Source of the DNA: Sphaerodactylus townsendi
Taxonomy: Eukaryota
Reading direction: 5' to 3'
DNA: 64,000 nt
Assembly (NCBI RefSeq): GCF_021028975.2
Contig: NC_059425.1
Span: forward strand, 16,182,001 to 16,246,000
Shown one piece after another: positions 2,383 to 62,736 of this stretch. The position numbers and the translations under genes were made by a program. Below the pieces are notes generated by a model, which was given only the letters and a program-made list of their open reading frames with translations, was not told the origin of the DNA and made no database searches. Position 1 is the first letter of the stretch. Every line of letters begins with the position of its first letter.

Positions 2383-2446
2383 ATGGCGATCCTGCACGCC
2401 CTTCTCATCATCCTTGTGGGCTCACTGGGGACTCTGGCTTTGCAAG
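2383..2446 (+). CDS. PTX-A exon 1, signal peptide MAILHALLIILVGSLGTLALQ
   Basis: Strong Kozak ccaccATGG, 21 mostly hydrophobic codons plus 1 nt, donor G|gtaggt. Same 64-bp phase-1 architecture as the other genes and as CRP/APCS. Confidence 0.9.
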
Positions 2447-2733
2447 GTAGGTGCTGGTTTGGGCTATAGGAACAAATGAAGCCCAGAAGAGCCAAAGAGG
2501 TGTAGATTGCAACGGGGTGTGTGTGGGGGCGTTGTTCCTAAGGAGGTGTACAGAAAGAACAGAGGTGGAGATTCCCTAGCATCGTGTCTAGACTCTAGGA
2601 GTAAAAATCTGCACCTGAGGGAAAGTTGTGCTTGAAAATTCCTGTTCCCCTCTGATATGAGGCTCCAGCTGATCCACTGAAATTGCCCAATCACAATCGG
2701 TACTGGTTCATCTTGTGGAGAAATGCTTTAGAC

Positions 2734-3244
2734 CAGTGGTGGCGAACCTATGGCACGGGTGCCAGAGGTGGCACTCAGAGCCCTCTCTGTGCGCACGCGC
2801 AAACAGAGTCACCCCCCCTCACATCTAGGCTGGCATGGGCTGCTGGGCTCGATTATTAGCATTAAACCTAAGATCGAGTTTTGGGGAAGCAGTCTAGGTA
2901 ACCCTGTTAAGTGCTGTTAAACCCCGCTGATTTTCATGCAAAGTACTAAAGCGCAATCCTTTACCTGGGAGTAAGCTCAGTTGCTGGCAATGGAGCTTGC
3001 TTCTGAGTAAACCCTCCTAGGGTCGTGATTCACCCGTTGGAAGAGTTGCACGGTTGCTTCAAAGCAAAGCCATCGACTACCACCGAGCTTACTCCCTAGT
3101 AACGCACGCCTTGGAGCCAACCATTTTTTTCTAAACTAAAACCTCAGTATTCAGGTTAAATTGCTGTGTTGGCACTTTGCGATAAATAAGTGGGTTTTGG
3201 GTTGCAATTTGGGCACTTGGTCTCGAAAAGGTTCACCATCACTG
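2734..3244. mobile_element. Non-autonomous hAT (Charlie-type) DNA transposon in the PTX-A intron
   Basis: TIRs cagtggtggcgaacct / aggttcaccatcactg and perfect 8-bp TSD CTTTAGAC (2726-2733, 3245-3252). Confidence 0.9.
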
Positions 3245-3454
3245 CTTTAGACTGTCTCAGATAAAGATGTTAGTAAGATCAGTTGAGGGGCAGCGGTCAA
3301 GGATATTGTGCGCTTCCACATTATAATATAGTCCCGAACAAATTTGAACATTATCATCCATTTCTATGTGGTGCCTTTGTCAAAACCATTGTTGTGTGCA
3401 TTACTGAGCATGGTACTTTGATACAAGAGCGTGAATGCCAAACTTTATTTTTAC

Positions 3455-3700
3455 TTTCAAGCAGATGTGGCTTTGGTCTGGTATTTTTTGCTCCTAACAT
3501 TTTGCCCGCGTCTATAGTTGGCATCTTCAAAGGCGTGTCATGGCAAGATGTAATAAAAACACACATTTCACAGTGACTTGCCGCTGAAGATGGAAGCCAT
3601 AAATGCGGGCAAAACACGAGGAGCAAAAACTTCTAGACCACAGCCACACAGCCTGGAAAACCCATAACAAAGTTCATTCTGGCTGTGAAAACCTGCGACA
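3455..3700. mobile_element. Inverted pair of Penelope-like pseudo-LTRs (degenerate hammerhead motifs) in the PTX-A intron
   Basis: ttttgctcctaacat..ggcatcttca arm facing a ctgaagatg..ggagcaaaaact..cctggaaaaccc..gtgaaaacctgcgaca arm. Confidence 0.7.
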
Positions 3701-4344
3701 TTATATCTTAATGTTATTCTGATAAATACACAAGCATGTCCCGCTTTTAAAATTTCTAGAGTACTATAGCTTTCCAACCATTTTCAGAGAACCAAACTTC
3801 TAAACATGACCAAGATTAGAGATCACATACCTGCTCCTTTTACAACTAAACTTCATTCAGGTGTATTGTTGAAGATTTTCATGGCTGGAATCACTAGGAT
3901 GTTGCGGGTTTTCCGGGTTGTATGGCCATGTTCCAGTAGTCTTTTCTCCAGATTAGAGTCTTAACCTGTCCTGGACTGCCAGTCTCACAGAGCGTTGGGT
4001 TCCAGCTGATAGGAGGCACAGATGCAAGAAAGGGATGTAAGAGAGCAGTCTTACTCTGAGTCCAGAGAAAAAGTCATAGCAGGTCTGTTAAGAGGCAGTG
4101 AAGGGTCTAAGAGAGGTTAGGTCAGGCAATGACTGGGGGGGGGGGCGGCTGTAGGCAGGAGGGCACCTGGAGGAGATATTGCCCCTGGGTGCCATTTCCT
4201 TTCATACATTTCTGGTCATACACCACAGTCCCGGTTTGGCTATGGCGCCACCAGGTAGGCTGTGCAAACAAAAATAGTCTTGCAAAAAATAGCATTGCGA
4301 CACTGCGTGCTATGTGTATCATGATCCCTGATTGCCTGAGACTA

Positions 4345-4558
4345 CATCTATGGCTACCAATCTTGATCCTCCTTGATCTCAGATTGCAAATGCCTTAGCA
4401 GACCAGGTGCTCGGGAGCAGCAGCAGAAGGCCACTGCTTTCACCTCCTGCAAGTGAGCTCCCAAAGGCACCTGGTGGGCCACTGCGAGTAGCAGAGTGCT
4501 GGACTAGATGGACTCTGGTCTGATCCAGCAGGCTCGTTCTTATGTTCTTATGTTCTTA
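4345..4558 (+). mobile_element. CR1 LINE 3' fragment
   Basis: tatggctaccaatcttga (YGYQS*) plus a 3' UTR closely matching the larger CR1 copies, and (TTCTTATG)n tail. Confidence 0.9.
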
Positions 4559-4952: not shown

Positions 4953-5587
4953 ACCTTGAAAGGAAGATCTTGATTTTCCCAGAAGCAACCAACACAGCTC
5001 ATGTTGTTTTGAGGGCTACGAGTCAGCAGTCTTTGACCAGCTTCACTGTGTGCCTCAAATCCTACACAGACCTGAGCCGTGCCTACAGCCTTTTCTCTTA
5101 CGCCACCAGAAAGTCTGACAACGAGTTCCTTATCTTCAAACCCAAACCCAACCAATACAACTTGTATGTGGGGGGATCCATCGTGACCTACAGTGTAGCA
5201 GACAATCGAGTCCCCAAACCACAGTGGGAGCATATTTGCATGAGTTGGGAGTCTGCCACAGGAATAGTGCAGTTTTGGTTGAATGGGGAAAGCTTGCCCC
5301 GCAAGGGTATGAAGAAAGGTTATACTATTGGTTCTGAAGCTTCAATCATACTCGGGCAGGAGCAGGATTCCTTTGGAGGTGGCTTTGACATCAACCAATC
5401 CTTTGTAGGCGAGATTGCAGACCTGTATTTGTGGGGTCGAGTGCTTTCACCGGAAGAACTGGTCCTCGTTGGCAACGGTGGTCACCTTTCTGACTACTTG
5501 ATCGATTGGCGATCCCTTAATTACGAAATCAAAGGCTATGTGGTGGTTAAGCCCTCCCTGTTTCACTCCTACAGAACCCCCATGTAA
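4953..5587 (+). CDS. PTX-A exon 2, short pentraxin (CRP/SAP/mucosal-pentraxin-like) domain; spliced product 232 aa
   Basis: Acceptor cttttacag|AC, signature HICMSWES, FTVC cysteine, DNE motif and LGQEQDSFGGGFDINQSFVG Ca2+ loop. Open to TAA. Confidence 0.96.
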
Positions 5588-5801: not shown

Positions 5802-5807
5802 AATAAA
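5802..5807 (+). terminator. Polyadenylation signal of PTX-A
   Basis: AATAAA about 215 bp after the stop, followed by a T/GT-rich tract. Confidence 0.7.
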
Positions 5808-19213: not shown

Positions 19214-19365
19214 NNNNNNNNNNNNNNNNNNNNNNNNNNNNNNNNNNNNNNNNNNNNNNNNNNNNNNNNNNNNNNNNNNNNNNNNNNNNNNNNNNNNNNN
19301 NNNNNNNNNNNNNNNNNNNNNNNNNNNNNNNNNNNNNNNNNNNNNNNNNNNNNNNNNNNNNNNNN
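19214..19365. other. Assembly gap (N run)
   Basis: Run of N. Confidence 1.
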
Positions 19366-20410: not shown

Positions 20411-20491
<81 letters not shown>

Positions 20492-20494
20492 TGA

Positions 20495-20764: not shown

Positions 20765-20766
<2 letters not shown>
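20495..20766 (-). mobile_element. Second, 5'-truncated R4/Dong copy in the same (TAA)n array
   Basis: Homologous to 19468-19750 (LQRLWHKP..VVPVVIGTLGAVP) and followed by (TAT)n at 20768-20816. Confidence 0.85.
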
Positions 20767-20818
<52 letters not shown>

Positions 20819-21118: not shown

Positions 21119-21930
21119 TTGATGGAGGGGGGAGCGGTCGCCGCCCCTGCAGCTGTACAGCATTGTTTGGAGGCGGTCGCTGGTTGGTTGCAGCAGAGCA
21201 GGTTAAAACTGAATCCATCGAAGACGGAGATCCTCTGGCTTGACTGCGAGGGGGAGGGGTCACTGGCGCAGACCTCCTCCGTTTGCAGTCTGGGGGTCCA
21301 CCTGGATTTGTCTCTTTCAGTGGAGACCCAGGTGACCCTTACACCCCGGACTGCGTTTTTCCATCTGTGTCAGGCCCGGTGGTTGGCCCCCTTCCTCTCC
21401 CAAGCGGACCTGGCCACGGTGATTCATGCAATGGTCACCTCCAGGTTAGACTGTTGTAACTCGCTCTATGCGGGCCTTCCCTTGCGTTTGATTCGGAAAC
21501 TAAAACTGGTCCAACATGCAGCGGCATGCTTGCTCACAGGGGGCGCCTTTCGAGATCATATTCAGCCTGTGTTGCGCCAGCTGCATTGGCTCCCAGTTGA
21601 ATTCTGAATCATCTTCAAGGTGTGGGTTTTGACCTTTAAGGCCTTACGCGGCCAGGGATCCTCATACCTTTGGGACCGCATTACCCCATATGTCCCTACT
21701 TGGCCTTTGCACAGCAGAGGCCAATTTGTCGGTGGTTACCGCCCTTCAATGATGCGGCTGGCCTCCACGTGGGCCAGGGCCTTTATGGCTCTGGCCCCAG
21801 CCTGGTGGAACACTCTCCCTCCAGCTGTCCGGGCCCTGCGGGATCTTGGTGAATTCCACAGGGCCTGCAAGACTGATTTGTTCCACCAGGCCTCTGGAGT
21901 GACCAGCCTCTGGCAGATACGCCCCTGACC
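21119..21930 (+). mobile_element. L2 LINE ORF2 3' fragment
   Basis: WLQQSRLKLNPSKTEIL, VTSRLDCCNSLYAGLP, LHWLPV and APAWWNTLP motifs, with an internal stop. Confidence 0.9.
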
Positions 21931-22282
21931 CAAATTAAAGCAATGGTTCTTTTTCAACAGCCACCTGGGGTAAGGTGGGGTGGTGGTCTGCTGGCAATAG
22001 CAGCTTCACAGGTTGACCTATCTGCTCAGGACAGAGGCCGTTCCATGGGCCTGTAACTTGATGTTTGACAGCATAGGTAGAATTGCAAAGTGTAGCTCAG
22101 TCAACAGATTAGTCAGTGACGTCCTACCTGTGGGAACATCTACATTGGCGTACTCCCTGGAGTATGGGACGTGTTTATCTTCTGGAAACAAGTTTGCCTC
22201 TCCCCAAAGAAAGTGGACTTTCTCAGAAGGCACCCTTTTGGTCAAATAACCGACTCCTGCCCCACCCTGCTCAGCTCACGGG

Positions 22283-22290
22283 TATATTTT
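22283..22290 (+). promoter_or_regulatory. Conserved TATA-like element (cacgggTATATTTTggaaggg) of PTX-B
   Basis: Same block about 112-127 bp upstream of the ATG in B, C (33492-33499), D (46501-46508) and E (55472-55479). Confidence 0.55.
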
Positions 22291-22397
22291 GGAAGGGCTC
22301 TGTGGCTCCCTCTTGGGAATCAGAGGAGGCTCGGGAGCCAGGCCCGATCGAGCGTCATTTTCCCATCTCCTCTCAGATCATTCTGTGGTTGACCATC

Positions 22398-22461
22398 ATG
22401 AGGAAGATGCTTCTTTCTCTCTTGCTCCTTGCTGGTCTCTGGGGCTCTCTTGCCCAGAAAG
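22398..22461 (+). pseudogene. PTX-B exon 1, signal peptide MRKMLLSLLLLAGLWGSLAQK
   Basis: 64-bp phase-1 exon with donor G|gtgggt, homologous to exon 1 of PTX-C to F. Confidence 0.88.
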
Positions 22462-25158: not shown

Positions 25159-25787
25159 ATCTCGAAAGGAAGGCGTTCGTTTTTCCAGAGGCATCAAAAA
25201 CGGCGCATGTGGTCTTGAAGCCCACAATGCGACGTCCGTTGACCAGTTTCACTCTGTGCATGAGGTTCCACTCGGCCCTGACCTGCGGCTACAGCCTCTT
25301 CTCTTATGCCACAAAGAGAAACCCCAACGCGATCCTCCTCTTTGTGAAGAAACCCAATCGATTCGATTTTTATTTGGGCGGTAAAGCGGTGCCTTCACGG
25401 TTGCACCAAACTATGTCAACAGCCATGCTGGGAGGCACATCTGCTTGAGTTGGGAATCTTCCACTGGCTTAGTGGAGTTCTGGATCAACGGTCAACCTCT
25501 GGTCCGGAAGAGCCTGAAGAAAGGCCATGCTGTCCCCACCGAGGCATCCGTTATCCTCGGCCAAGAGCAAGATTCCTTCAGAGGTGGCTTCGACATCAAA
25601 GAATCCTTCGTTGGGGAGATCACGGACATGTGGGATCGTGTTCTGTCTCCCGATGAAGTGGGCCAGGCCTGGTATGTTGACGATTTCCCTGGAAATGTAA
25701 TTAACTGGAAATCGTTAAAACTACAAAACCCAAGGTAATGTTATTGTGAAGCCCGCTCTGGCTTCGTTCTACAGAGCTCCTGGGTAG
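25159..25787 (+). pseudogene. PTX-B exon 2, pentraxin domain with frameshifts
   Basis: Acceptor ctcctcag|AT and DLERKAFVFPEAS start. A -1 nt shift near 25391-25393 gives a stop at 25446-25448. Also a 6-nt deletion near 25627 and a +1 A at 25717-25720. Corrected reading gives HICLSWES and ends YRAPG* at 25787. AATAAA at 25935-25940. Confidence 0.85.

Positions 25788-29738: not shown

Positions 29739-29741
<3 letters not shown>

Positions 29742-29820
<79 letters not shown>
29742..29820. repeat. (TCAA)n microsatellite
   Basis: Direct repeat. An inverted copy with the same flank lies at 39631-39800. Confidence 0.95.
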
Positions 29821-33200: not shown

Positions 33201-33618
33201 GAAATGTGACTAGTCCAGGGGTCTGCAGCCAATTGGCCATGCTAGCGGGGGCTGATGGGAATTGTAGTCCATGAACATCTGCAGACCCCTGGACTAGTCA
33301 AAGTTCACCCAGCAGGAATGTAGGAGTGCTGAAACACATCTGGTTCACCAGGTAAACCCCTGCCACTCAGGTGGAGAAGTGGATAATCTCCAGAATCTCC
33401 AGAATCCACCTGCCTGTAACCACAACAGGACGCTGGCTTTATTCAGTAAATAAATACTGAATAAAGTGCCTCACCCTTCTCAGTTCACGGGTATATTTTG
33501 GAAGGGCTCTTCAGCTCCCACTTCAGAATCGGCCTGTAAAGGGGACAAGACACTGAGCAACCCTCACGTCTTGGACGCTGCTCCATTTTTTACTTCGATC
33601 CCTCTGGAATTGGCCATC

Positions 33619-33682
33619 ATGCGGAAGATGCTCCTCTCTCTCCTCCTCCTCGTCAGCCTGGTGGGCTCTCTCGCTCTGGAAG
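33619..33682 (+). CDS. PTX-C exon 1, signal peptide MRKMLLSLLLLVSLVGSLALE
   Basis: 64-bp phase-1 exon, donor G|gtgggt. Confidence 0.92.
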
Positions 33683-34817: not shown

Positions 34818-35035
34818 GGCTAGTGGCAGAAGAATGTGGCCAGTTAGGCAACAGGTGGGTTGGAAGAGAATCCCTCTCTTGTTGGGGGGAAGGGAAATCA
34901 TTAATTCATTTGCCCTCTGAATTAATATATATTCTCAATCAGCAAGCAAATGTTTTTCACAAAAGACCCTCTGGGACATGACCTCTCTTGCAGAATGACA
35001 GTTTTGCCCAACCCTGATTCTCTTTCCCTCCGCAG

Positions 35036-35661
35036 ATCTGGAAGGGAAGGCATTGGTTTTCCCGGAAGCATCAGACACAGCCCATGCACGCTTGAACGTC
35101 ACGATCCAGCAGCCCCTGTCGAGCTTCACCCTGTGCCTAAGATACCTCACAGAAATAAAGCGCACCCAAACCCTTTTCTCTTACGCAAGCAAGAGGACTG
35201 ACAACGAGATAGCTCTCGACAGATACGATCTGGGTTACCAGCTTTATACACAGGGGCTTACCTATGCAGACTTCAAGGTTCCGGAAATATTAACCAGCAA
35301 CTCTCTTGGGGAGCACGTTTGCGTAAGTTGGGAGTCTGCCACAGGCTTAGCTGAGCTCTGGGTGAACTGGAGGCCCTTGGTCCGGAAGAGCTTGCAGAAA
35401 GGCCACTCCGTCATGGCTGAAGGATCCATTGTTCTTGGACAAGACCAGGATAATGTTGGAGGGGGCTTTAACATCAACGATTGCTTTGTAGGGGAGATCA
35501 CAGACGTGTACATGTGGGACCGTGTTCTGTGCCCCGACGAGGTGGTCCATGCCTTTCACAACCACCCTCTTCCAGGCTACCTGATCAACTGGAGATCACT
35601 GAGTTACAGCATTAAAGGCTATACCAAGCCTGCCTTGTTGTCTGCCTGCAGAACTGGGTAG
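35036..35661 (+). CDS. PTX-C exon 2, short pentraxin domain; spliced product 229 aa
   Basis: Acceptor ctccgcag|AT, HVCVSWES, DNE, GQDQDNVGGGFNINDCFVG. Open to TAG. Confidence 0.94.
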
Positions 35662-39807: not shown

Positions 39808-41960
39808 AGAACATAAGAACATATGAAAGAGCCTGCTGGATCAGACCAGAGTCCATCTAGTCCAGGACTCTGCTACTCGCAGTGGCCCACCAGGTGCCTT
39901 TGGGAGCTCACATGCAGGATGTGAAAGCAATGGCCTGCTGCTGCTGCTGCTGCTGCTCCCGAGCACCTGGTCTGCTAAGGCATTTGCAATCTCAGATCAA
40001 GGAGGATCAAGATTGGTAGCCATAGATCGACTTCTCCTCCAGAAATCTGTCCAAGCCCCTTTTAAAGCTATCCAGGTTAGTGGCCATCACCATCTCCTGT
40101 GGCAGCATGTTCCAAACACCAATCACACGTTGTGTGAAGAAATGTTTCCTTTTATTAGTCCTAATTCTTCCCCCCACCATTTTCAATAAATGCCCCCTGG
40201 TACTAGTATTGTGAGAAAGAGATAAAAATTTCTCTCTGTCAACATTTTCTACCCCATGCATAATTTTATAGACTTCAATCATATCCCCCCTCAGCCGTCT
40301 CATCTCCAAACTAAAGAGTCCCAAACGCTGCAGCCTCTCCTCATAAGGAAGGTGCTCCAATCCTTCAATAATCCTCGTTGCCCTTCTCTGCACTTTTTCT
40401 ATCTCTTCGATATCTTTTTTGAGATGTGGCGACCAGAACTGAACACAGTATTCCAAGTGCAGTCGCTCCACGGCTTTATATAAGGGCATGACAATCCTTG
40501 CAGTTTTATTATCAACTCCTTTCCTAATGATCCCCAGCATAGAGTTTGCCTTTTTCACAGCTGCCATGCATTGAGTTGACATTCCCATGGAATTCCCATG
40601 GACACTTGTAGCGTGTATGTGAAGTTTGGATTTTTTGCCCCTATGTGCATCACTTTTCATTTTGCTACATAGAATAGAATAGAATAGAATAGAATAGAAT
40701 AGAATAGAATAGAATAGAATAGAATCTTTATTGGCCAAGTGTGATTGGACACACAAGGAATTTGTCTCCGGTGCATATGCTCTCAGTGTACATAAAAGAA
40801 AAATACATTTGTCAAGAATCATAAGGTACAGCACTTAATGATTGTCATATAGGTCTAGTAAGCAATCAGGAAACAATCAGTAGTAATGAAAACATAAAAT
40901 GTAAAATCATAAAATAAAATAAAATAAAATAAAATAAAATAAAATAAAATGTCAGCACAGGCTATAGTCATACAGTCATAAGTGGGAGGAGATGGGTAAT
41001 AGGAATGATGAAAAAAGTAGTGCAGTAATTATATAATAAGTATATAATAAATAGTTTAACATTATCGAGGGAATTATTTGTTTAACAGAGTGATGGCATT
41101 CGGGAAAAACTGTTCTTATGTCTAGTTGTCTTGGTGTGCAGTGCTCTGTAGCAACGTTTAGAGGGTAAGAGTTGAAACAGTTTATGTCCAGGATGCGAGG
41201 GGTCAGTAAATATTTTCACAGCCCTTTTTTTGACCCGTGCAGTATACAGGTCCTCAATGGAAGGCAGGTTAGCAGCAATTGTTTTTTCTGCAGTTCTGAT
41301 TATTCTCTGAAGTCTGTGTCGATCTTGTTGGGTTGCAGAACCAAACCACACAGTTATAGAGGTGCAGATGACAGACTCAATGATTCCTCTGTAGAACTGT
41401 ATCAGCAGCTCCTTGGGCAGTTTGAGCTTCCTGAGTTGGCGCAGAAAGAACATTCTTTGTTGTGCTTTTTTGATGACATTTTTGATATTAGGTGACCATT
41501 TTAGGTCATGAGATATGATGGAGCCTAGAAATTTAAAGGTCTCTACTATTGATACTGTGTTGTCTAGTATTGTGAGAGGAGGTAGGATGGGAGGGTTTCT
41601 CCTGAAATCTACCACCATTTCTACGGTTTTAAGTGTGTTCAGTTCTAGATTGTTCCAGTGGCACCACGAGGCTAGTTGTTCAACCTCCCGTCTGTATGCG
41701 GTTTCATCGTTGTCTCGAATGAGACCAATCACTGTTGTATCATCTGCAAATTTCAGTATTTTAACAGTATTTATTACAGACATTGAACTGCATTTGCCAT
41801 TTCTTAGCCCACTCACCTAATTTATCAAGGTCCGTTTGGAGCACTTCACAATCCTTTGCAGTTCTCACCACCCTACATAATTTGGTATCATCTGCAAATT
41901 TGGCCACCACGCTACCCACCCCTACTTCCAGGTCATTTATGAATAGGTTAACGAGCCCTG
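39808..41960 (-). mobile_element. CR1 LINE 3' portion interrupted by a Rex1/Babar insertion
   Basis: NLFINDL..KFADDTKL (41761-41979 ORF) continues as HLEYCVQFWSP..RRLRGDMIEVYK..YGYQS (40007-40670), then the 3' UTR. Confidence 0.93.
40671..41779 (-). mobile_element. Rex1/Babar-clade LINE 3' fragment
   Basis: KFADDTTVIGLI..NDETAYRREV..LELNTLKTVEMVVDFRR..KKAQQRMFFLRQL, (TTCTA)n tail at 40671-40725, apparent TSD ACAT (40667-40670, 41780-41783). Confidence 0.88.
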
Positions 41961-44752: not shown

Positions 44753-45384
44753 CTACCCAGCTCTTTGGGCAGACAGCAGGGCAGGCTTAACAAGGGCATA
44801 GCCTCTGATGCTGTAACTCAGTGATCTCCAGTTGATCAGGTAGTCAGGAAGAGGGTAGTTGTGAAAGGCAAGGACCACCTCGTCGGGGCACAGAACACGG
44901 TCCCACATATACAAGTCTGTGATCTCCCCTACAAAGCAATAGTCGATGTCAAAGCCCCCTCCAAAGTTATCCTGGTCTTGTCCAAGAACAATGGATCCTT
45001 CAGCCATGACGGAGTGACCTTTCTGCAAGCTCTTCCGGACCAAGGGCCTCCCGTTCACCCAGAGCTCAGCTAAGCCTGTGGCAGACTCCCAACTTACGCA
45101 AACGTGCTCCCCAACCGAGTTGCTGGTTAACATGTCGGGAACCTTGAACTCTACATAGTTACCCCCCAGCATATAAAGATGGTAGGCAATATTGTTTCTG
45201 TTGAGAACAATCTCGTTGTCATTCCTTTTGCTTGCGTAAGAGAAAAAGGTTTGGCGGTGCTTTATTTCTGTGAGGTATCTTAGGCACAGGGTGAAGCTCG
45301 ACAGGGGCTGCTGGATCGTGACGTTCAAGCGTGCATGGGCTGTGTCTGATGCCTCCGGGAAAACCAATGCCTTCCCTTCCAGAT
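44753..45384 (-). CDS. PTX-D exon 2, short pentraxin domain; spliced product 231 aa
   Basis: Acceptor ctccgcag|AT on the minus strand, HVCVSWES, DNE, GQDQDNFGGGFDIDYCFVG. Intact ORF. Confidence 0.95.
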
Positions 45385-46325: not shown

Positions 46326-46389
46326 CTTCCAGAGCGAGAGAGCCCACGAGGCTGAGGAGGAGGAGGAGAGAGAGGAGCATCTTCCGCAT
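46326..46389 (-). CDS. PTX-D exon 1, signal peptide MRKMLLSLLLLLSLVGSLALE
   Basis: 64-bp phase-1 exon, donor G|gtgggt. Confidence 0.93.
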
Positions 46390-46669
46390 GATGGCCAGTC
46401 CCAGAGGGATCCAAGTAGAGATGGAGCAGCGCCCAAGGATTGCTCAACGTCTTGTCCCCTTCACAGGCTGATTCTGATGTGGGAGCTGAAGAGCCCTTCC
46501 AAAATATACCCGTGAACTGAGCAGGGTGAGGCAGGATGTTTATTCAATAAGGTCAATTTTAAAGAATATCCCAGATGGGATGTACCCTGGAGAGCAGCTG
46601 GCATCTGGCCGTTGGTTAGTAAAATTTCTTTGACAAAGAGATTCCGTGTAGCAGGGGTCATAAAAAATG

Positions 46670-46958: not shown

Positions 46959-47549
46959 AACATTTATTCCCCACTCCTCCTCCTGAGTGGCAGAGACTTA
47001 TATGGTGAACCAGGTGTGCATTCCTGCTGGGTGACCTCAGGTCAGTCACAGTTCTCTCAGAACTCTCTTAGCCCCACCTATCTCACAAGGTGTCTGTTGT
47101 AGGGAGAGGAGTTTGTAAGCCACCTTGAGTCTCCTTACAAGAGAGAAAAGTAGGGTATAAATCCAAATTCTTCTCTTCTTCTTCTATAGAGGGATATCTT
47201 ATGATCTACAGCATGACATCTTATGATTTGGATGTTCTACCTCTGTGGATACATGCTTTGATGCAGGTCTTGATCACTTTCCCAGTTTAAATTAAAAACC
47301 AAACAGAGGCCTCCCACTTTGAAAAACTGGCCTCCTGTGGCTTCACCTGGGGTTTCATTAGAAGACTGCTCTACCTGTGTGAGATGTGCTGAGCATTGGT
47401 TGGCTGCTACATTCCTATGCAGTTGACCATGGAGCCCCAGCATCCCACTCTGTGATTGGCGGGCATTGGCGTAATGAGAGATTCCAGTCCCACATCCAAT
47501 CAGAGAATCCAGACTAAACAATTCCAAAAGGTTCTCCTTATACAGACTA

Positions 47550-48735
47550 CTAGCAGGATGCCCATGCTTCGCTACATGGTTTGTAATATGTTTGTAATCT
47601 GTTTTGATTGTATTTGGCTGTAGCGGTCTGGTTAACGTGAGGGTTGGTCGAGGAGTACTTTTTCGCAGCCTGTCTGTTAGCCTTGGGGTGACATTCAGCA
47701 TACTTCCTCTCAGCCTGTCTGTGAATTTTGGGGTGACAGTCCGCATACTTCATCACAGCCTCTCTATGAATTTCGGGGTGACATTCAGCATTCAGTAGAC
47801 CTGTCCATGCATTTTGAATGTTGGCATGAAATTGCTCTCTTTCACCTGGTGGGCTCCAAAAGACATCATGTGGAAGCAGCCGTTGTATTTTCGGGATGCA
47901 GAAAGGAAGTGTTCGGCAATTGGATGCTGATGAGTGAGAAGGCTGTGAAGAGGTTCAGGGTAGGGTTGAAGGGCAGGGAGCTGGACTGTACCGCCACTGC
48001 AGCACATTCCTGGGGACTCATCTCGCCACTTCAGAGCACGACACAAAGCACAGGGTGATTGGAGGCCGAGAGCAATAAACTTGTCTCCACAATAAGCAAT
48101 CTGATGTCCATATGCAAAACCCGACAAATGTTTAGTAGTCCAAGGTGATAGTGTGGTTTGTAATCTGTTTTGATAGTATTTGGCTGTAGTGGTGTTGTTA
48201 ACGTGAGGGTGGGTGGAGGAGTACTTTTTCACAGCCAGTCTGACATTCAGCATACTTTTTTGCAGCCTGTTTGTGAATTTTGGGGTGACATGCAGCATAT
48301 TTCCTCACAGCCTGTCTGTGGACTGATGGGTTTGTTTTCAAATAGGTTCACATGCGTTGTGGAGGGCGGTGGTAGAGTGCAGTTGGTGAAGGACATGAAG
48401 CTGGCTGTGTTTAACTGTCACCCTTAGAATGTTCGTGCAGCATGTCTGTGGACTGAGGGATTGGTTTGCCCTTAGAATGTTCGCGCGGATGGCCAGAGAT
48501 GAGCAATTAAAACAGTAAATAGGTAATAAATCGAGTGGAAGTGAATATTTTGGGAAATCCTTTCTTAGTGAGCACCTGGAATACGTAAGGAACAGATGTG
48601 CCAAATTTCATGTGTGTGGCTTCAGTGGTTTTTGAGTTCTGTTGATGAGTGAGTGAGTGAGTGAGTGAGTGAGTGAGTGAGTGAGTGAGTGAGTGAGTGA
48701 GTGAGTGAGTGGTATTTCGCGTTCATATATATAGA
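47550..48735 (-). mobile_element. Helitron deletion derivative retaining an N-terminal Rep/Hel zinc-finger fragment
   Basis: Minus-strand A|TCTATATA..CTAG|T ends. ORF 47792-48298 reads CALCRALKWRDESPGMCCSGG..RKYNGCFHMMSFG..FMPTFKMHGQVY. Empty site visible in the paralog near 59330-59345. (GAGT)n at 48647-48710. Confidence 0.9.
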
Positions 48736-49929: not shown

Positions 49930-50561
49930 CTACCCAGCTCTGTGGGCTGACAGTAGGGCAGGCTTAACAAGGGCATAGCCTCTAATGCTGTAACTCAGTG
50001 ATCTCCAGTTAATCAGGTAGCCAGGAAGAAGGTAGTTGTGAAAGGCAAGGACCACCTCGTCGGGGCACAGAACACGGCCCCACATGTACACGTCTGTGAC
50101 CTTCCCTACAAAGGATTGGTTGATGTCAAAGCCCCCTCCAACGTTATCCTGGTCTTGCCCGATAACCACGGATCCTTCAGCACTGACGGAGTGACCTTTC
50201 TGCAAGCTCTTCCGGACCAAGGGCCTCCCGTTCACCCAGAGCTCAGCTAAACCTGTGGCAGACTCCCAACTTACGCAAACGTGCTCCCCAATCGAGTTGC
50301 TGGTTAGTATGTCTGGAACCTTGAACTCTACATGGGTAAGCCCCTCTATATTAAGCTGGTAACCATTATTGCTTTTGTAGAGGGCGATCTCATTGTCAGT
50401 CCTCTTGCTTGCGTAAGAGAAAAGGGTTTGGAAGCCCTTTATTTCTGTGAGGTATCTTAAGCACAGGGTGAAGCTCGTCAGGGGCTGCTGGGTCGTGATA
50501 TTCAAGCGTGCATGAGCTGTGTTTGATGCCTCCGGGAAGACCAACGCCTTCCTTTCCAGAT
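49930..50561 (-). CDS. PTX-E exon 2, short pentraxin domain; spliced product 233 aa
   Basis: Acceptor ctcctcag|AT, HVCVSWES, DNE, GQDQDNVGGGFDINQSFVG. Intact ORF. Confidence 0.95.
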
Positions 50562-50998: not shown

Positions 50999-52550
50999 CT
51001 TCCCTGAAGACTAAAAGATGGCCAATGTCACACCAATCTTTAAGAAAGGATCTAGGGGGGACCCAGGAAATTACAGGCCAGTCAGTTTGACATCTGTTCC
51101 TGGTAAATTAGTAGAATCTATCATTAAAGATAAAATTATTAAACATGTAGAAAAGCAAGACCTGCTGAGGAAGAGTCAGCATGGCTTTTGCAGAGGCAAG
51201 TCCTGTCTTACAAACTTACTAGAGTTCTTTGAGGGTGTAAACAGGCATGTGGATAAGGGGGAACCAGTGGACATTGTCTACTTGGATTTCCAAAAGGCTT
51301 TTGACAAAGTTCCTCACCAGAGACTATTGAGAAAACTCAGCAATGAAGGAATAAGAGGGGAAGTCCTCCTATGGATTAAAAACTGGTTGAGAAACAGGAA
51401 GCAAAGAGTGGGTGTAAATGGGAAATTTTCACAATGGAGAGATTTAGGGAGTGGTGTCCCCCAAGAATCCGTTTTGGGACCAGTGCTCTTTAACCTTTTC
51501 ATAAATGACCTGGAAGTAGGGGTGGGTAGCATGGTGGCCAAGTTTGCAGATGATACCAAATTATGTAGGGTGATGAGAACCGCAAAGGATTGCGAAGAGC
51601 TCCAAGCGGACATTGATAAATTAGGTGAGTGGGCTAAGAAATGGCAAATGCAGTTCAATGTAGCAAAATGTAAAGTGATGCACATAGGGGCAAAAAATCC
51701 AAATTTCACATACAAGCCACAGGGGTCAGTGCTATCAGTCACAGACCAGGAAAGGGATTTAGGCGTCTTAGTTGATAGTTCCATGGGAATGTCAACTCAA
51801 TGCATGGCAGCTGTGAAAAAGGCAAACTCTATGCTGGGGATAATTAGGAAAGGATAATAAAACTGCAAAGATTGTCATGCCCTTATATAAAGCAGTGGTG
51901 CGACCGCACTTGGAGTACTGTGTCCAGTTCTGGTCGCCACATCTCAAAAAGGATATGGAAGAGATGGAAAAAGTGCCGAGAAGGGCAACGAGAATGATTG
52001 AGGGATTGGAGCACCTTCCTTATGAAGAGAGACTGCAGCGTTTAGGGTTCTTTAGTTTGGAGAGGAGACGTCTGAGGGGGGATATGACTGAAGTTATAAA
52101 ATTGTGCATGGGGTAGATAATGTTGACAGAGAGAAATTTTTTTCTCTTTCTCACAATACTAGAACCAGGGGACATACATTGAAAATGCTGGGGGGAAGAA
52201 TAAGGACTAATAAAAGGAAACACTTCTTCATGCAATGTGTGATTGGTGTTTGGAATATGCCGCCACAGGAGGTGGTGATGGCCACTAACCTGGATAGCTT
52301 TAAAAAGGGCTTGGACAGATTTATGGAGAAGTCGATCTATGGCTACCAATCTTGATCCTCCTTGATCTCAGATTGCAAATGCCTTAGCAGACCAGGTGCT
52401 CAGGAGCAACAGCCGCAGAAGGCCATTGCTTTCACATTCTGCATGTGAGGTCCCAAAGGCACCTGGTGGGCCACTGCGAGTAGCAGAGAGCTGGACTAGA
52501 TGGACTCTGGTCTGATCCAGCTGGCTTGTTCTTATGTTCTTATGTTCTTA
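50999..52550 (+). mobile_element. CR1 LINE (RT domain to 3' end)
   Basis: ANVTPIFKKG..NYRPVSLTS, YLDFQKAFDKVPH, FADDTKL. Small frameshifting deletions, (TTCTTATG)n tail, apparent TSD ttaactgt. Confidence 0.95.
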
Positions 52551-52661: not shown

Positions 52662-52720
<59 letters not shown>

Positions 52721-53003: not shown

Positions 53004-53093
<90 letters not shown>

Positions 53094-53901: not shown

Positions 53902-54816
53902 GTAAACTATGTAGGGTGGTGAATACCACAAAGGATTGCGAAGAGCTCCAAGCGGACCTTGATAAATTAGGTGAGTGGGCTCAGAAATGGCAAATGCAGT
54001 TCAATGTAGCAAAATGTAAAGTGATGCACATAGGGGCAAAAAATCCAAACTTCACATACACGCTACAGGGGTCAGTGCTATCAGTCACAGACCAGGATAA
54101 ACTCTATGCTGGGGATAATTAGGAAAGGAATTGATAATAAAACTGCAAAGATTGTCATGCCCTTATATACAGCAGTGGTGCGACCGCACTTGGAGTACTG
54201 TGTTCAGTTCTGGTCGCCACATCTCAAAAAGGATATCGAAGAGATAGAAAAAGTGCAGAGAAGTGCAACGAGGATGATTGAAGGATTGGAGCACCTTCCT
54301 TATGAGGAGAGACTGCAGCGTTTGGGACTCTTTAGTTTGGAGAGGAGACGGCTGAGCGGGGATATGACTGAAGTCTATAAAATTATGCATGGGGTAGAAA
54401 ATGTTGACAGAGAGAATTTTCTCTCTCTTTCTCACAATACTAGAACCAGGGGGCATTCATTGAAAATGCTGGGGGGGAGAATTAGGACTAATAAAAGGAA
54501 ACACTTCTTCACGCAACGTGTGATTGGTGTTTGGAATATGCTGCCACAGGAGGTGTTGATGGCCACTAACCTGGATAGCTTTAAAAGGGGCTTGGACAGA
54601 TTTATGGAGGAGAAGTCGATCTATGGCTACCAATCTTGATCCTCCTTGATCTCAGATTGCAAATGCCTTAGCAGACCAGGTGCTCGCAGAAGGCCATTGC
54701 TTTCACCTCCTGCCTGTGAGCTCCCAAAGGCACCTGGTGGGCCACTGTGAGTAGCAGAGTGCTGGACTAGATGGATTCTGGTCTGATCCAGCAGGCTAAT
54801 TCTTATGTTCTTATGT
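53902..54816 (+). mobile_element. CR1 LINE 3' portion with an internal deletion
   Basis: ELQADLDKL..RPHLEYCVQFWSP..YGYQS*, 3' UTR and tail. Confidence 0.93.
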
Positions 54817-55283: not shown

Positions 55284-55353
55284 CTTCCAGAGCGAGAGAG
55301 CCCACGAGGCTGAGGAGGAGGAGGAGGAGGAGAGAGAGGAGCATCTTCCGCAT
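55284..55353 (-). CDS. PTX-E exon 1, signal peptide MRKMLLSLLLLLLLSLVGSLALE (two extra Leu)
   Basis: 70-bp phase-1 exon, (CTC)n expansion, donor G|gtgggt. Confidence 0.92.
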
Positions 55354-55890
55354 GATGGCCAGTCCCAGAGGGATCCAAGTAGAGATGGAGCAGCGCCCAA
55401 GAAGCGAGTATTGCTCAACGTCTTGTCCCCTTCACAGGCCGATTCTGAAGTGGGAGCTGAAGAGCCCTTCCAAAATATACCCGTGAACTGAGCAGGGTGA
55501 GGCAGGATGTTTATTCAGTAAGGTCCGTTTTAAAGATTACCCCAGACTGGATGTCGCCTGGAGAGCAGCTGGAATCTCGTCTTTGGTTGGTACAATTTCT
55601 TTGACAAATTCAGAGTCGCAGGGGACATAAGAAATGGCAATAGAACTTGGACAGAGTATCCCCGATGGACAGTCTTCACAGCGGCACCATTTATTTCTCA
55701 GCAAACTCCAAAAAGGGAAGCCCAAAGGGTGTCATGTTGAATTATTTGCTGATCAATCAACTCCAGTCGGCTATTAGAAGACAACAATAACTTGGGAAGG
55801 CGCGTCCTGCTGAAGCAGACCACGGGCCTTTTCCACACAAATTTCCTAAAACTTTTGTAAAATATTTGTAAAATGTTTTCAATCCTCCCT

Positions 55891-60444: not shown

Positions 60445-60574
60445 NNNNNNNNNNNNNNNNNNNNNNNNNNNNNNNNNNNNNNNNNNNNNNNNNNNNNNNN
60501 NNNNNNNNNNNNNNNNNNNNNNNNNNNNNNNNNNNNNNNNNNNNNNNNNNNNNNNNNNNNNNNNNNNNNNNNNN
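60445..60574. other. Assembly gap in the PTX-F 3' UTR
   Basis: Run of N. Confidence 1.
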
Positions 60575-60762
60575 CCCTTTCTCTCCTGCAGGAGACTCAA
60601 AGGGGCTTACAATCTCCTTGCCCTTCCCCCCTCACAACAAACACCCAGTGAGGTAGGTGGGGCTGAGAGAGCTCTGAGAAGCTGTGACTAGCCCAAGGTC
60701 ACCCAGCTGGCGTGTGTGGGAGTGTACAGGCTAATCTGATTTCCCCACATAAGCCTCCACAG
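60575..60762 (-). mobile_element. 5'-truncated Squam3-like SINE in the PTX-F 3' UTR
   Basis: Reverse complement of 22995-23181. Absent from the C, D and E UTRs. Confidence 0.85.
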
Positions 60763-60936
60763 CGATGTAATAGGTACTGCTTCAGTAGTACAATGGCTAC
60801 TATATGGACTACAGTTACTACGTTGTTATTTGAGATTAGTAGAGCAGTATTTATGGACTGAATTATCCTGCAGAAATGTTCGGTTAACTTGCTCTCCCCT
60901 CTCCGCCTTCCTAGACCAGTGTGTCATTTGCCACCC

Positions 60937-61568
60937 CTACCCAGCTCTTTGGGCAGACAGCAAGACAGGCTTAACAAGGGCATAGCCTCTGATGCTGTAA
61001 CTCAATGATCTCCAGTTAATCAGGTAGCCAGGAAGAGGGTAGTTGTGAAAGGCAAGGACCACCTCGTCGGGGCACAGAATACGGTCCCACATATACAAGT
61101 CTGTGATCTCCCCTACAAAGGATTGGTTGATATCAAAGCCCCCTCCAAAGGTATCCTGTTCTTGCCCGATAACAATGGATCCTTCAGCACTGACGGAGTG
61201 ACCTTTCTGCAAGCTCTTCCGGACCAAGGGCTTCTCGTTCACCCAGAGCTCAACTAAACCTGTGGCAGACTCCCAACTTACGCAAACGTGCTCCCCAACA
61301 GAGTTACTGGTTAATATTTCCGGAACCGTGAAGTCTACTTTGGTAAGCCCCTCTATATAAAGCTCGTAGCCAATATTGTTTCTGTTGAGAAGAATCTCGT
61401 TGTCAGTCCTCTTGCTTGCGTAAGAGAAAAGGGGTTGGATGTGCTTTATTTCTGTGAGGTATCTTAGGCACAGGGTGAAGCTCGTCAGGGGCTGCTGGAT
61501 CGTGGTCTTCAAGCGTGCATGGGCTGTGTCTGATGCCTCCGGGAAAACCAATGCCTTCCCTTCCAGAT
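60937..61568 (-). CDS. PTX-F exon 2, short pentraxin domain; spliced product 231 aa
   Basis: Acceptor ctcctcag|AT, HVCVSWES, DNE, GQEQDTFGGGFDINQSFVG. Intact ORF. Confidence 0.95.
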
Positions 61569-62672
61569 CTGAGGAGGGAAAGAGAATCAGGGTTGGGCAA
61601 AACTGTCATTCTGCAAGAGAGGTTATGTCCCAGAGGGTCTTTTGTGCAAAACATTTGCTTGCTGATTGAGAATATATATTAATTCAGAGGGCAAATGAAT
61701 AAATGATTCCCCTTCCCCCCAACAAGAGAGAGATTCTCTTCCAACCCACCTGTTGCCTAACTGGCCACATTCTTCAGCCACTAGCCCAAGGATCTGCAAC
61801 CTGTGGCTCTCCAGATGTTCATGAACTACAATTCCCATCAGCCCCTGCCAGCATCGGCCATGCTGGCATGGGCTGATGGGAATTGTAGTTCATGAACATC
61901 TGGAGAGCCGCAGGTTGCAGACCCCTGCTTAGCCTAACCTAGCCTGGCCCCCAGTCAGAGTCAACCAAACCAGTCACCTCATAGCACACAGCTCAAGCTG
62001 TTGGGTGGAGGAGGAGAATTAAATGCAACCATGAAAATCGGGGGGGGGGGGGGGCTCATTCCCAGGAAGAGGGAATCTCCAAACAGAATCTCCCAACTGC
62101 ATAATCTTGTTCAAGGAAAATGCTTTGTGTTCAGAAGCTGTGCTGACTGCTGAGGGTTTTCCAGGACGCGTAGCCCTGGTCTGGTTGTTTTTGTGGCTAA
62201 GGTTTTGCTGCATCTATGACCGGCATCTTTAGAGGCATGTCATGGTAAGATGTACTCCTCTCCATCCCGTGGTGTGGAGTGGAGTGATTGTGCCATGGGG
62301 TGTTTGTTTTCACACATGGACCGAAGAGTGAGGTAAACAAAAGAGATATCCCATCACACAATCGCTCCACACTGTGCCACAGAGATGATCTTATCTTTTT
62401 TGTGACATGCCTCCAAAGATGCCTGCCATAGATGCAAGTATAATGTTTGGAGCAAAACCTACCAGACTAGAAATCTCTCAACACTGTCAACAGCTAATTG
62501 ATTCTGGCTGTGAAAGCCTTTGACAATACATAACTGTATTAGTCTGCTGTAGATCTCTCATATGCTTTTCCCTTAAAATATTATTGGCATCTAATGTGCT
62601 ACTGGAGTCACATCTAGATGCTTCGGCTGAAGCATGTGGAGGCTCTTGTCCCACTGTGATGATGATACCCAC

Positions 62673-62736
62673 CTTCCAGGGCGAGAGAGCCCACGAGGCT
62701 GATGAGGAGGAGGAGAGAGAGGAGCATCTTCTGCAT
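62673..62736 (-). CDS. PTX-F exon 1, signal peptide MQKMLLSLLLLISLVGSLALE
   Basis: 64-bp phase-1 exon, donor G|gtgggt. Confidence 0.93.

What the first reader, a model, noticed from the sequence alone, without database searches (positions are those of the whole stretch)
2383..62736. Six-gene short-pentraxin array: a candidate lineage-specific expansion of secreted pattern-recognition proteins
Seen: six genes with the same two-exon, phase-1 architecture in 60 kb. A is divergent, B is broken, and C-F are close duplicates, with C inverted relative to D-F. Established: humans have only CRP and APCS plus pseudogenes at the locus, while multi-copy pentraxin families are known from teleosts and horseshoe crabs. 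Inference: a birth-and-death expansion in a squamate producing a repertoire of soluble innate receptors. If co-expressed, these could form hetero-pentamers with combinatorial specificity. I do not recall such an array being characterised in lizards, but I cannot search the literature.
Basis: partly seen in the sequence, partly recalled or inferred. Interest (0 to 1): 0.85.

Follow-up and report, generated by a model that had tools for sequence, protein, structure and literature searches.

The report
Gecko short-pentraxin tandem gene array
A real cluster of CRP/SAP-like innate-immune lectin genes in a dwarf gecko: four recent copies stay intact but differ at the predicted ligand pocket; multi-copy pentraxin sets are common in lizards, so this is a well-resolved ordinary case.

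Summary
The window (Sphaerodactylus townsendi, CM037614.2:16182001-16246000) holds six two-exon, phase-1 short-pentraxin genes. A is about 50% identical to the rest. B has two frameshifts. C-F are 80-85% identical in protein, with C inverted. No N gap touches a coding exon.

The cluster is larger than the window: a seventh pentraxin gene ends about 7 kb upstream of it.

Trees show all squamate short pentraxins as one clade, with no one-to-one orthology to mammalian CRP, SAP or MPTX. A belongs to a gecko-wide ortholog group. B is the decayed member of an old gecko lineage. C-F are monophyletic and sister to a single Euleptes gene, so they are a lineage-specific expansion.

C-F cannot be haplotigs, because they differ by 8-18% at the DNA level. 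They are kept intact: exon 2 has no frameshifting indel, against 7-13 indels in about 640 nt of 3' flank.

Their amino-acid differences concentrate 3- to 5-fold in the segments that align to the SAP/CRP ligand pocket, while most Ca2+ ligands are kept. Mosaic site patterns indicate gene conversion.

Expression, read depth and oligomer state could not be tested. Other squamates also carry 3-6 annotated paralogs, so I class this as a new member of a known kind, of moderate interest.

Other first-reader notes on this same window already flagged the variable face, the mosaicism and the Ca-loop changes. I tested them here.

The parts
2255..2280 (+). Gene A: TATA-like block about 125 nt upstream of the ATG
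   Evidence: Alignment of the six 5' flanks; coordinates.
2383..2446 (+). Gene A exon 1: signal peptide, 64 nt, phase-1 donor G|GTAGGT
   Evidence: The model equals public protein P0121.
4953..5587 (+). Gene A exon 2: pentraxin domain with all canonical Ca2+ ligands. Full product 232 aa.
   Evidence: (256 bits to PF00354).
22277..22300 (+). Gene B: TATA-like block
22398..22461 (+). Gene B exon 1: intact signal peptide and donor
25159..25784 (+). Gene B exon 2, an apparent pseudogene. It has a 1-nt deletion near 25391-25393, a 1-nt insertion in an A-run near 25717-25720, a 6-nt in-frame deletion in a conserved strand, and Pro at the Asp58-equivalent position.
33486..33509 (+). Gene C: TATA-like block
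33619..33682 (+). Gene C exon 1: signal peptide
35036..35661 (+). Gene C exon 2: pentraxin domain. Product 229 aa. Pocket residues D, T, Y, D.
   Evidence: (P0003).
44753..45384 (-). Gene D exon 2: pentraxin domain. Product 231 aa. Pocket residues N, M, Y, Y.
   Evidence: (P0001, 100% identical).
46326..46389 (-). Gene D exon 1: signal peptide
46491..46514 (-). Gene D: TATA-like block
49930..50561 (-). Gene E exon 2: pentraxin domain. Product 233 aa. Pocket residues Y, I, H, Q.
   Evidence: (P0004).
55284..55353 (-). Gene E exon 1: signal peptide, 70 nt, with two extra Leu codons. The 4.7-kb intron carries a LINE reverse-transcriptase fragment.
55462..55485 (-). Gene E: TATA-like block
60937..61568 (-). 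Gene F exon 2: pentraxin domain. Product 231 aa. Pocket residues N, I, K, Q. All Ca2+ ligands canonical.
   Evidence: (P0002, RefSeq model identical).
62673..62736 (-). Gene F exon 1: signal peptide
62845..62862 (-). Gene F: TATA-like block, with a 6-nt deletion just 5' of it

Best explanation
The window holds six genes of a cluster of at least seven short-pentraxin (CRP/SAP-family) genes on a chromosome of the gecko Sphaerodactylus townsendi. The cluster was built by repeated tandem and inverted duplication, loss, and occasional gene conversion.

- Gene A is the conserved, canonical member. It has one-to-one orthologs across geckos and all Ca2+ ligands are present.
- Gene B is the decayed copy of a second, old gecko-specific lineage.
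- Genes C-F descend from one ancestral gene after the split from the Euleptes lineage.

Each intact gene should encode a secreted protein of about 210 residues. It has a signal peptide on exon 1 and a jelly-roll pentraxin domain on exon 2, with the signature motif, the conserved disulfide and a double Ca2+ site. By homology it should form a cyclic oligomer that binds ligands through the Ca2+ face.

C-F keep their frame, splice sites, promoter block and most Ca2+ ligands. They differ at every residue that aligns to the SAP/CRP ligand pocket. The likeliest function (inferred, not shown) is therefore a small repertoire of soluble pattern-recognition lectins with four different ligand specificities on one conserved scaffold.

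Shown: gene structures, family membership, phylogeny, selection for intact ORFs, clustering of variation, and mosaicism. Inferred: secretion, Ca2+-dependent binding, different specificities and oligomer state.
For: Family membership:
- PF00354 at 200-256 bits.
- Full-length alignment to solved SAP (E = 8e-57) and CRP (E = 3e-55).
- Both cysteines and the signature motif are invariant in a 35-sequence alignment.

Gene structure:
- Phase-1 two-exon models that equal the public models P0002 and P0121.
- A conserved TATA-like block 121-133 nt upstream of every ATG.

History:
- C-F are monophyletic at 100/99 support and sister to the single Euleptes protein P0005 at 100/99.
- A sits in an 11-member gecko ortholog group at 100/99.
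- B pairs with Eublepharis P0019 at 100/95.
- All squamate genes form one clade, apart from the mammalian, bird, turtle and crocodilian genes.

Real duplicates:
- Duplication units of 1-2.5 kb align at 82-90% identity.
- Exon 2 mismatch is 8-11%, and the 3' flanks differ by 11-18% apart from the poorly aligned F 3' flank near the N gap.

Selection for function:
- Exon 2 has no frameshifting indel. There is one in-frame 6-nt indel.
- The 3' flank has 7-13 indel events per roughly 640 nt per pair.
- No stop codons occur.

Diversification:
- dN/dS is 0.52-1.06 among C-F, against 0.33-0.38 for A versus C-F.
- Mean pairwise difference in the ligand-face segments relative to the rest is 3.2-fold, and 5.2-fold for residues 58-81. 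The same ratio is 0.98 among ten gecko orthologs of A.
- All 6 of 6 pocket-equivalent residues vary (P = 4e-4).
- All 3 of 3 equivalents of the CRP phosphocholine contacts have three or more states among four genes (P = 3e-4).
- Asp58, Asn59, Gln137 and Asp138 are invariant.

Gene conversion:
- The 51 informative sites split 20/16/15 among the three possible topologies and fall in 22 runs (permutation P = 2e-4).
- The end of the C and F introns is 96-98% identical, against 85-94% for the other pairs.
Against: - No expression, protein or binding data exist.
- dN/dS does not exceed 1. The nonsynonymous versus synonymous contrast between the ligand-face segments and the rest is not significant (P = 0.11). 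Locally relaxed constraint is therefore not excluded.
- The ligand-face segments were first delimited after seeing the data. The a-priori pocket list rests on my recollection of the SAP and CRP crystal structures, mapped through the alignment.
- Gene conversion can make old paralogs look like a young species-specific clade.
- The Euleptes copy number comes from annotation only, in a database clustered at 90% identity.
- C and D have lost the Gln148-equivalent Ca2+ ligand, and C, D and E carry Asp at the Glu136-equivalent position. Ca2+ site II may be impaired in some copies.
- B's frameshifts could in principle be assembly errors, because the assembly was 10X Supernova with nanopore gap filling.
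Confidence: 0.7

Rival explanations
1. Redundant duplicates under relaxed constraint. C-F are functional but interchangeable copies (a dosage effect), and the variable loops drift because those positions tolerate change. There is no adaptive repertoire.
For: - dN/dS is at most about 1 everywhere.
- The nonsynonymous versus synonymous contrast between segments is not significant (P = 0.11).
- The same loops are moderately more variable in other gecko-type paralog groups, with ratios of 1.1-2.0.
Against: - The same segments are not more variable than the rest among ten A-type orthologs, where the ratio is 0.98.
- In C-F the excess is 3- to 5-fold and hits all six pocket-equivalent residues, while four of the six Ca2+ ligand positions (Asp58, Asn59, Gln137, Asp138) stay invariant.
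- ORFs are actively maintained.
Confidence: 0.3
2. Old expansion masked by concerted evolution. The four genes duplicated before the Sphaerodactylus-Euleptes split, and gene conversion has since homogenised them within the species. On this reading the lineage-specific clade is an artefact of conversion.
For: - Mosaic, spatially clustered topologies and a near-identical C/F intron tract show that conversion is active.
- Outside the variable segments the proteins are about 91% identical.
Against: - Only one Euleptes protein falls in the clade. The other Euleptes paralogs form their own separate expansion.
- Non-coding flanks as well as exons show 11-18% divergence, so homogenisation is far from complete.
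Confidence: 0.2
3. Assembly artefact. C-F are haplotype copies or false tandem duplicates created by the linked-read and nanopore assembly.
For: The assembly is 10X Supernova with nanopore gap filling and contains N gaps in the region. Read depth could not be checked.
Against: - Copies differ by 8-11% in exon 2 and by 11-18% plus many indels in the flanks.
- They have different intron sizes (938-4,719 nt as printed; 941-4,722 nt after correcting the exon-2 starts) and different transposon insertions.
- One copy is inverted.
- Alleles or assembly duplicates would be near-identical.
Confidence: 0.02
4. Mixed oligomers. Co-expressed C-F subunits assemble into hetero-pentamers, which would multiply the specificities.
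For: - Outside the variable segments C-F are about 91% identical.
- Residues that I recall as CRP inter-protomer salt-bridge partners are invariant in C-F. These are the equivalents of Glu101, Arg118, Lys123 and Lys201, with Glu in all four at the Asp155-equivalent position. This comes from the alignments read against my memory of the CRP structure.
- Limulus CRP is built from several subunit types (PMC6503050).
Against: Nothing was tested. The complex prediction could not be run and co-expression is unknown.
Confidence: 0.15

Closest known systems
Mammalian short-pentraxin locus (CRP, APCS/SAP, MPTX and pseudogenes)
   Same: - The same Pfam family and the same two-exon, phase-1 gene structure.
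- Signal peptide, signature motif, disulfide and double Ca2+ site.
- Tandem arrangement with pseudogenes.
- 42-47% identity to mammalian SAP, CRP and MPTX sequences.
   Different: - No one-to-one orthology. Mammalian CRP, SAP and MPTX cluster together, and all squamate genes form a separate clade, so names such as 'SAP-like' or 'CRP-like' are arbitrary here.
- This locus has more intact copies: six intact genes and one pseudogene.
- A young four-gene burst has pocket residues that all differ.
[quoted passage not shown]
   Same: Lineage-specific multiplication of short pentraxins, with differential properties among the copies (PMC6503050; PMC5446266).
   Different: - This is an independent expansion inside Lepidosauria.
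- The fish families include a second ancient subfamily (group II) and partly three-exon genes. Here all genes are two-exon.
- In salmonids part of the expansion comes from whole-genome duplication, not tandem duplication.
Limulus polyphemus CRP genes and subunits
   Same: Several homologous genes whose products share conserved ends and differ internally. The oligomers are built from several subunit types (PMC6503050).
   Different: - The Limulus genes are from an arthropod and are unrelated by descent at the level of these duplications.
- The Limulus protein forms hexameric/dodecameric assemblies and has three disulfides.
- Mixed assembly is shown for Limulus and only hypothesised here.
Short-pentraxin paralog sets annotated in other squamates (Euleptes, Gekko, Heteronotia, Eublepharis, Lerista, Hemicordylus, Anolis, Pogona)
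   Same: - The same clade and comparable copy numbers, 3-6 per species.
- Independent species-level bursts, for example four Euleptes paralogs and three Heteronotia paralogs.
   Different: - The C-F burst is specific to the Sphaerodactylus lineage.
- Its ligand-face to scaffold variability ratio (3.2 to 5.2) is higher than in the Euleptes burst (1.1 to 1.8) or the Gekko/Heteronotia/Paroedura group (1.4 to 2.0).
- None of these sets has been described in the literature I could search.

Membership tests
Short pentraxins (CRP/SAP family, Pfam PF00354) | Pentraxin domain match above the curated threshold over its full length | tested here: met
   A, C, D, E and F score 200-256 bits against a cut-off of 25 and cover at least 189 of the 194 profile positions. 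They give full-length alignments to solved SAP and CRP at E = 8e-57 and 3e-55. B matches in three frame pieces.
Short pentraxins (CRP/SAP family, Pfam PF00354) | Pentraxin signature H-x-C-x-S/T-W-x-S and the conserved intrachain disulfide pair | tested here: met
   The signature is present in A-F. Both cysteines are invariant in a 35-sequence alignment.
Short pentraxins (CRP/SAP family, Pfam PF00354) | Short form: a product of about 205-210 mature residues with only a signal peptide before the domain, and two coding exons split by a phase-1 intron just after the signal peptide | tested here: met
   Products are 229-233 aa. The A and F models are identical to public annotation. Signal-peptide cleavage was judged by eye only, because no predictor was available.
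Short pentraxins (CRP/SAP family, Pfam PF00354) | Double Ca2+ site: equivalents of SAP Asp58, Asn59, Glu136, Gln137, Asp138 and Gln148 | tested here: inconclusive
   - A and F have all six.
- E has Asp for Glu136.
- C has Asp for Glu136 and Asp for Gln148.
- D has Asp for Glu136 and Tyr for Gln148.

The residue list comes from my knowledge of the SAP structure, mapped through the alignment. Metal binding itself is not testable here.
Short pentraxins (CRP/SAP family, Pfam PF00354) | Cyclic pentameric (or related) assembly | not tested
Short pentraxins (CRP/SAP family, Pfam PF00354) | Secreted plasma or mucosal protein, often an acute-phase reactant made in the liver | not testable with these tools
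The genome paper lists only head and embryo RNA-seq.
Ortholog of mammalian CRP, or of APCS/SAP, or of MPTX | Groups with that mammalian gene to the exclusion of the other two in a phylogeny | tested here: not met
   Mammalian CRP, SAP and MPTX form their own group (SH-aLRT 87). All squamate genes form a separate clade (98) with Sphenodon as sister (92).
Lineage-specific (Sphaerodactylus) expansion | The paralogs are monophyletic and nested within a clade that has a single co-ortholog in the nearest sampled relative | tested here: met
   C-F have 100/99 support, and C-F plus Euleptes P0005 have 100/99. Caveats: Euleptes copy number is taken from annotation only, and gene conversion is active.

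The most novel reading that the evidence does not exclude
C-F form a diversity-maintained repertoire. Selection keeps four different ligand pockets apart on a scaffold that gene conversion keeps homogeneous. A Cys shared by all four, absent from their Euleptes co-ortholog, could link subunits covalently. Co-expressed subunits might then mix into hetero-oligomers. That would give a squamate a combinatorial soluble pattern-recognition system, analogous in logic to the multi-subunit Limulus CRP.
Probability: 0.2. Interest if true: 0.6.

Novelty: new member of a known kind. Interest (0 to 1): 0.35.

Why it matters
Reptile short pentraxins are essentially uncharacterised. A 2019 review notes that no reptile CRP protein has been isolated (PMC6503050).

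This locus gives a clean example with exact coordinates of how squamates build pentraxin repertoires independently of mammals:
- a conserved canonical gene;
- a dead member of an old lineage;
- a young burst whose differences fall on the predicted ligand pocket.

It also shows that the CRP and SAP labels in squamate annotations carry no orthology information.

If the four pockets do bind different ligands, the quartet is a compact natural experiment on how pentraxin specificity is encoded by three or four residues. The finding does not overturn anything known. Tandem expansion of innate-immune lectins with variable binding sites is a familiar pattern.

Tried and rejected
- **Read-based tests.** Read depth, B's frameshifts and expression are therefore untested. 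They were used only in local alignment and local scripts.
- **Hetero-oligomer test.** Complex prediction on C plus F was unreachable four times, so there is no verdict.
- **Structure prediction.** It was not accepted, so fold confirmation rests on sequence alignment to solved SAP and CRP.
- **Seventh gene.** The look-up of encoding contigs for P0125 found nothing on record. The extent of the cluster upstream of the seventh gene is unknown.
- **Literature.** Searches for squamate, lizard or gecko pentraxin expansions, or birth-and-death of pentraxins, found nothing specific.
- It was rerun from stored files.
- **Assembly or haplotype duplication.** Rejected on divergence.
- **Positive selection in the strict sense (dN/dS above 1).** Not demonstrated.
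- **Spliced models.** Searches were done exon by exon by reference. The joined exon 1 plus exon 2 models were checked for frame and length only in a local script and were never sent to a search tool. The public proteins P0002 and P0121 served as the full-length forms.
- **N gaps.** They were not filled or looked up.

Full report
**1. What is in the sequence**

A six-frame ORF list shows five long ORFs with pentraxin-like translations. A tblastn of these against the window finds exactly six exon-2 copies:
- A at about 4.95-5.59 kb, + strand.
- B at 25.16-25.78 kb, + strand, in three frame pieces.
- C at 35.04-35.66 kb, + strand.
- D at 45.38-44.75 kb, - strand.
- E at 50.56-49.93 kb, - strand.
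- F at 61.57-60.94 kb, - strand.

The five intact copies hit Pfam PF00354 (Pentaxin) at 200-256 bits, against a threshold of 25, over essentially the whole profile.

A search with B's signal peptide finds one matching first exon upstream of each of B-F, and A's first exon starts at 2383. Every first exon is 64 nt (70 nt in E, which has two extra Leu codons). Each ends one base into a codon at a strong donor. Every exon 2 follows a polypyrimidine tract and CAG.

Corrected models give products of 232 (A), 229 (C), 231 (D), 233 (E) and 231 (F) residues (with exon-2 starts corrected). The models for F and A are identical to the public proteins P0002 and P0121.

The joined models were checked for frame only in a local script.

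**2. The N gaps**

The gaps at 19214-19365, 23182-23424 and 60445-60574 lie, respectively:
- between A and B;
- inside B's intron;
- 363-492 nt downstream of F's stop codon.

No coding exon or splice site touches a gap, so the gene models do not depend on continuity across them. I did not fill them.

**3. Gene B**

B's exon 1, donor, acceptor and promoter block are intact. Exon 2 reads in frame 1, then frame 3, then frame 1. This reflects a 1-nt deletion near 25391-25393 and a 1-nt insertion in a short A-run near 25717-25720.

B also lacks two residues of a conserved strand and has Pro at the Asp58-equivalent Ca2+ ligand. Its terminal branch is twice as long as that of its sister gene.

The assembly used nanopore gap filling followed by polishing, so sequencing error is not fully excluded. 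Two independent frameshifts together with the other defects make a pseudogene the likelier reading, at about 80%.

**4. Organism and place**

D's exon 2 is 100% identical to a protein of Sphaerodactylus townsendi, and C, E and F also match annotated proteins of that species. Locus look-ups place the window at CM037614.2:16182001-16246000 of GCA_021028975.2.

A seventh pentraxin gene (228 aa) ends about 7.2 kb upstream of the window, on the same strand as A (confirmed by tblastn). It is probably P0125, which is 73-75% identical to A. No pentraxin lies within 10 kb beyond F. The cluster therefore has at least seven genes.

**5. Are C-F real duplicates?**

Duplication units of 1-2.5 kb that include intron, exon 2 and 3' flank align at 82-90% identity. 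Exon 2 differs by 8-11%. The 3' flanks differ by 11-18% with many indels, apart from the poorly aligned F 3' flank near the N gap.

Introns range from 938 to 4,719 nt as printed (941-4,722 nt after correcting the exon-2 starts). E's intron carries a LINE reverse-transcriptase fragment. C is inverted relative to D-F.

Haplotigs or assembly duplicates would be near-identical, so that explanation is rejected.

**6. Phylogeny**

I built two trees:
- a 94-sequence tree covering squamates, tuatara, turtles, crocodilians, birds, mammals and a frog outgroup;
- a 47-sequence tree run with bootstraps.

The results were:
- (a) All squamate short pentraxins form one clade, with Sphenodon as sister. Mammalian CRP, SAP and MPTX group together elsewhere. 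There is no one-to-one orthology, and the 'SAP-like' or 'CRP-like' names are arbitrary.
- (b) A lies in an 11-member gecko-wide ortholog group (100/99), with the upstream seventh gene as a fast-evolving Sphaerodactylus duplicate.
- (c) B pairs with Eublepharis P0019 (100/95) inside a gecko-only clade of 22 sequences (99/90). That clade also contains independent bursts in Euleptes (four genes) and Heteronotia (three genes).
- (d) C-F are monophyletic (100/99) and sister to one Euleptes protein (100/99).

This is the pattern expected for birth-and-death evolution, with a Sphaerodactylus-lineage burst.

Copy number as such is not unusual. Annotation shows 3-6 paralogs in many squamates.

**7. Are C-F kept functional?**

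Among C-F, exon 2 has no frameshifting indel and only one in-frame 6-nt indel. The 3' flank shows 7-13 indel events per roughly 640 nt per pair, and the intron end shows 3-4 per roughly 240 nt in five of the six pairs, with none between C and F. There are no stop codons, and all splice sites are intact.

A conserved TATA-like block lies 121-133 nt upstream of every ATG, including in the 50%-divergent A. Purifying selection on an intact, transcribed ORF is the simplest explanation.

**8. Where C-F differ**

Pairwise dN/dS among C-F is 0.52-1.06, against 0.33-0.38 for A versus C-F.

The 58 variable residues cluster in two segments, residues 41-94 and 140-164 of the mature-domain numbering. There pN/pS is 0.92-1.06, against 0.39-0.55 elsewhere. 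The clustering of amino-acid variability is significant (odds ratio 4.0, P = 1.5e-5). The nonsynonymous versus synonymous contrast is not (P = 0.11).

As a control, ten gecko orthologs of A show a ligand-face to rest ratio of 0.98, so these segments are not intrinsically fast. In C-F the ratio is 3.2, and 5.2 for residues 58-81. Other gecko paralog groups give 1.1-2.0.

Using the alignment to solved SAP and CRP, the following positions all vary among C-F (6 of 6, P = 4e-4):
- the residues aligned with SAP Leu62, Tyr64, Glu66, Tyr74 and Lys79;
- the residue aligned with SAP Gln148, which is also a Ca2+ ligand;
- this set includes the equivalents of the CRP phosphocholine contacts Phe66, Thr76 and Glu81.

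The three phosphocholine-contact equivalents each have three or more states among the four genes (P = 3e-4). The equivalents of Asp58, Asn59, Gln137 and Asp138 are invariant.

The list of pocket residues is from my knowledge of the published SAP and CRP structures, not from a tool.

The four genes thus carry four different pocket combinations:
- C: D, T, Y, D.
- D: N, M, Y, Y.
- E: Y, I, H, Q.
- F: N, I, K, Q.

C and D have lost the Gln148-equivalent ligand, and C, D and E have Asp for Glu136. Ca2+ site II may therefore differ between copies.

**9. Gene conversion**

Across intron end, exon 2 and 3' flank, the 51 parsimony-informative sites split 20/16/15 among the three possible four-taxon topologies. 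They are spatially clustered, falling in 22 runs (permutation P = 2e-4).

The first nine informative sites, at the end of the intron, all join C with F. Those two copies are 96-98% identical there, against 85-94% for the other pairs. They lie 26 kb apart in opposite orientation.

So the family evolves by birth and death plus conversion. Conversion could make the burst look younger than it is. It also makes the persistence of different pocket residues more notable.

**10. Mechanism proposed**

By homology, each intact gene encodes a secreted jelly-roll lectin. It should assemble into a cyclic oligomer and bind ligands through a double Ca2+ site on one face.
- A is the canonical member.
- C-F most likely provide several ligand specificities on one scaffold.

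Secretion, metal binding, oligomer state, expression and ligand differences are inferences. Mixed oligomers remain an untested possibility.

**11. Literature**

Searches found no description of squamate pentraxin arrays. A review of CRP evolution states that genes are present in lizards but that no reptile CRP protein has been isolated or characterised (PMC6503050). The phylogeny it cites used one gecko and two anole sequences (PMC5446266).

**12. Verdict**

The evolutionary inference holds for C-F but not for multi-copy status as such, which is common in squamates and already visible in public annotation.

I class it as a new member of a known kind, of moderate interest. The variable pocket on a conserved, conversion-homogenised scaffold is the part worth a follow-up experiment.

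Other first-reader notes on this same window (s1-751606, s1-751622, s1-751643) named the variable face, the mosaicism and the Ca-loop changes. I tested these here, and they hold at the level described above.

Noticed in passing
L002:1-460 (about 7.2 kb upstream of window position 1, + strand): A seventh pentraxin gene of the cluster (228 aa, probably P0125, 75% identical to A). It is a fast-evolving Sphaerodactylus-specific duplicate of A. Gln and Asn replace the Glu136 and Asp138 Ca2+ ligand equivalents, and Asn replaces the His of the pentraxin signature.
   Followed up: partly
window 35036-35661, 44753-45384, 49930-50561, 60937-61568: All four C-F proteins carry an extra Cys just before the conserved Pro-Asp-Glu, where the Euleptes co-ortholog has Arg and other geckos have Ser, Asp or Tyr. 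C and D have a further Cys next to the Gln148-equivalent position, and C has a third near its C-terminus. Unpaired cysteines could give disulfide-linked oligomers.
   Followed up: no
window 34786-35035 and 61569-61818: The last 250 nt or so of the C and F introns are 96-98% identical, against 85-94% for the other pairs. The two genes are 26 kb apart and inverted. This looks like a recent gene-conversion tract.
   Followed up: partly
window 51018-51857 (+), 41082-41816 (-), 40007-40834 (-), 54106-54639 (+), 21119-21607 (+): LINE-type retrotransposon fragments. PF00078 reverse transcriptase scores E = 3e-31 at 51018-51857, inside E's 4.7-kb intron. There are weaker reverse-transcriptase matches at 41082-41816 and 21119-21607. 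The ORFs at 40007-40834 and 54106-54639 resemble each other but have no Pfam hit.
   Followed up: partly
proteins P0007-P0014, P0018, P0020, P0158 (other geckos): Many members of the gecko-only pentraxin subfamily have Ser or Ala instead of the Asp58-equivalent Ca2+ ligand, whereas C-F and the A-type genes mostly keep Asp. This suggests altered metal or ligand binding in that subfamily.
   Followed up: no
window 55284-55353 (-): E's signal-peptide exon has a 6-nt expansion of the CTC/CTG leucine-codon run, adding two Leu residues.
   Followed up: no
window 47237-48298 (-): Two adjacent ORFs of 168-169 aa between D and E share repeated motifs, and a 45-nt tandem repeat lies at 47666-47791.
   Followed up: no
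window 20411-20489, 20766-20816, 52664-52717, 53004-53093, 1066-1157, 29741-29840: Perfect or near-perfect tri- and tetranucleotide microsatellites, (TTA)n, (ATA)n, (ATTC)n and (TCAA)n, scattered between the genes and in E's intron.
   Followed up: no
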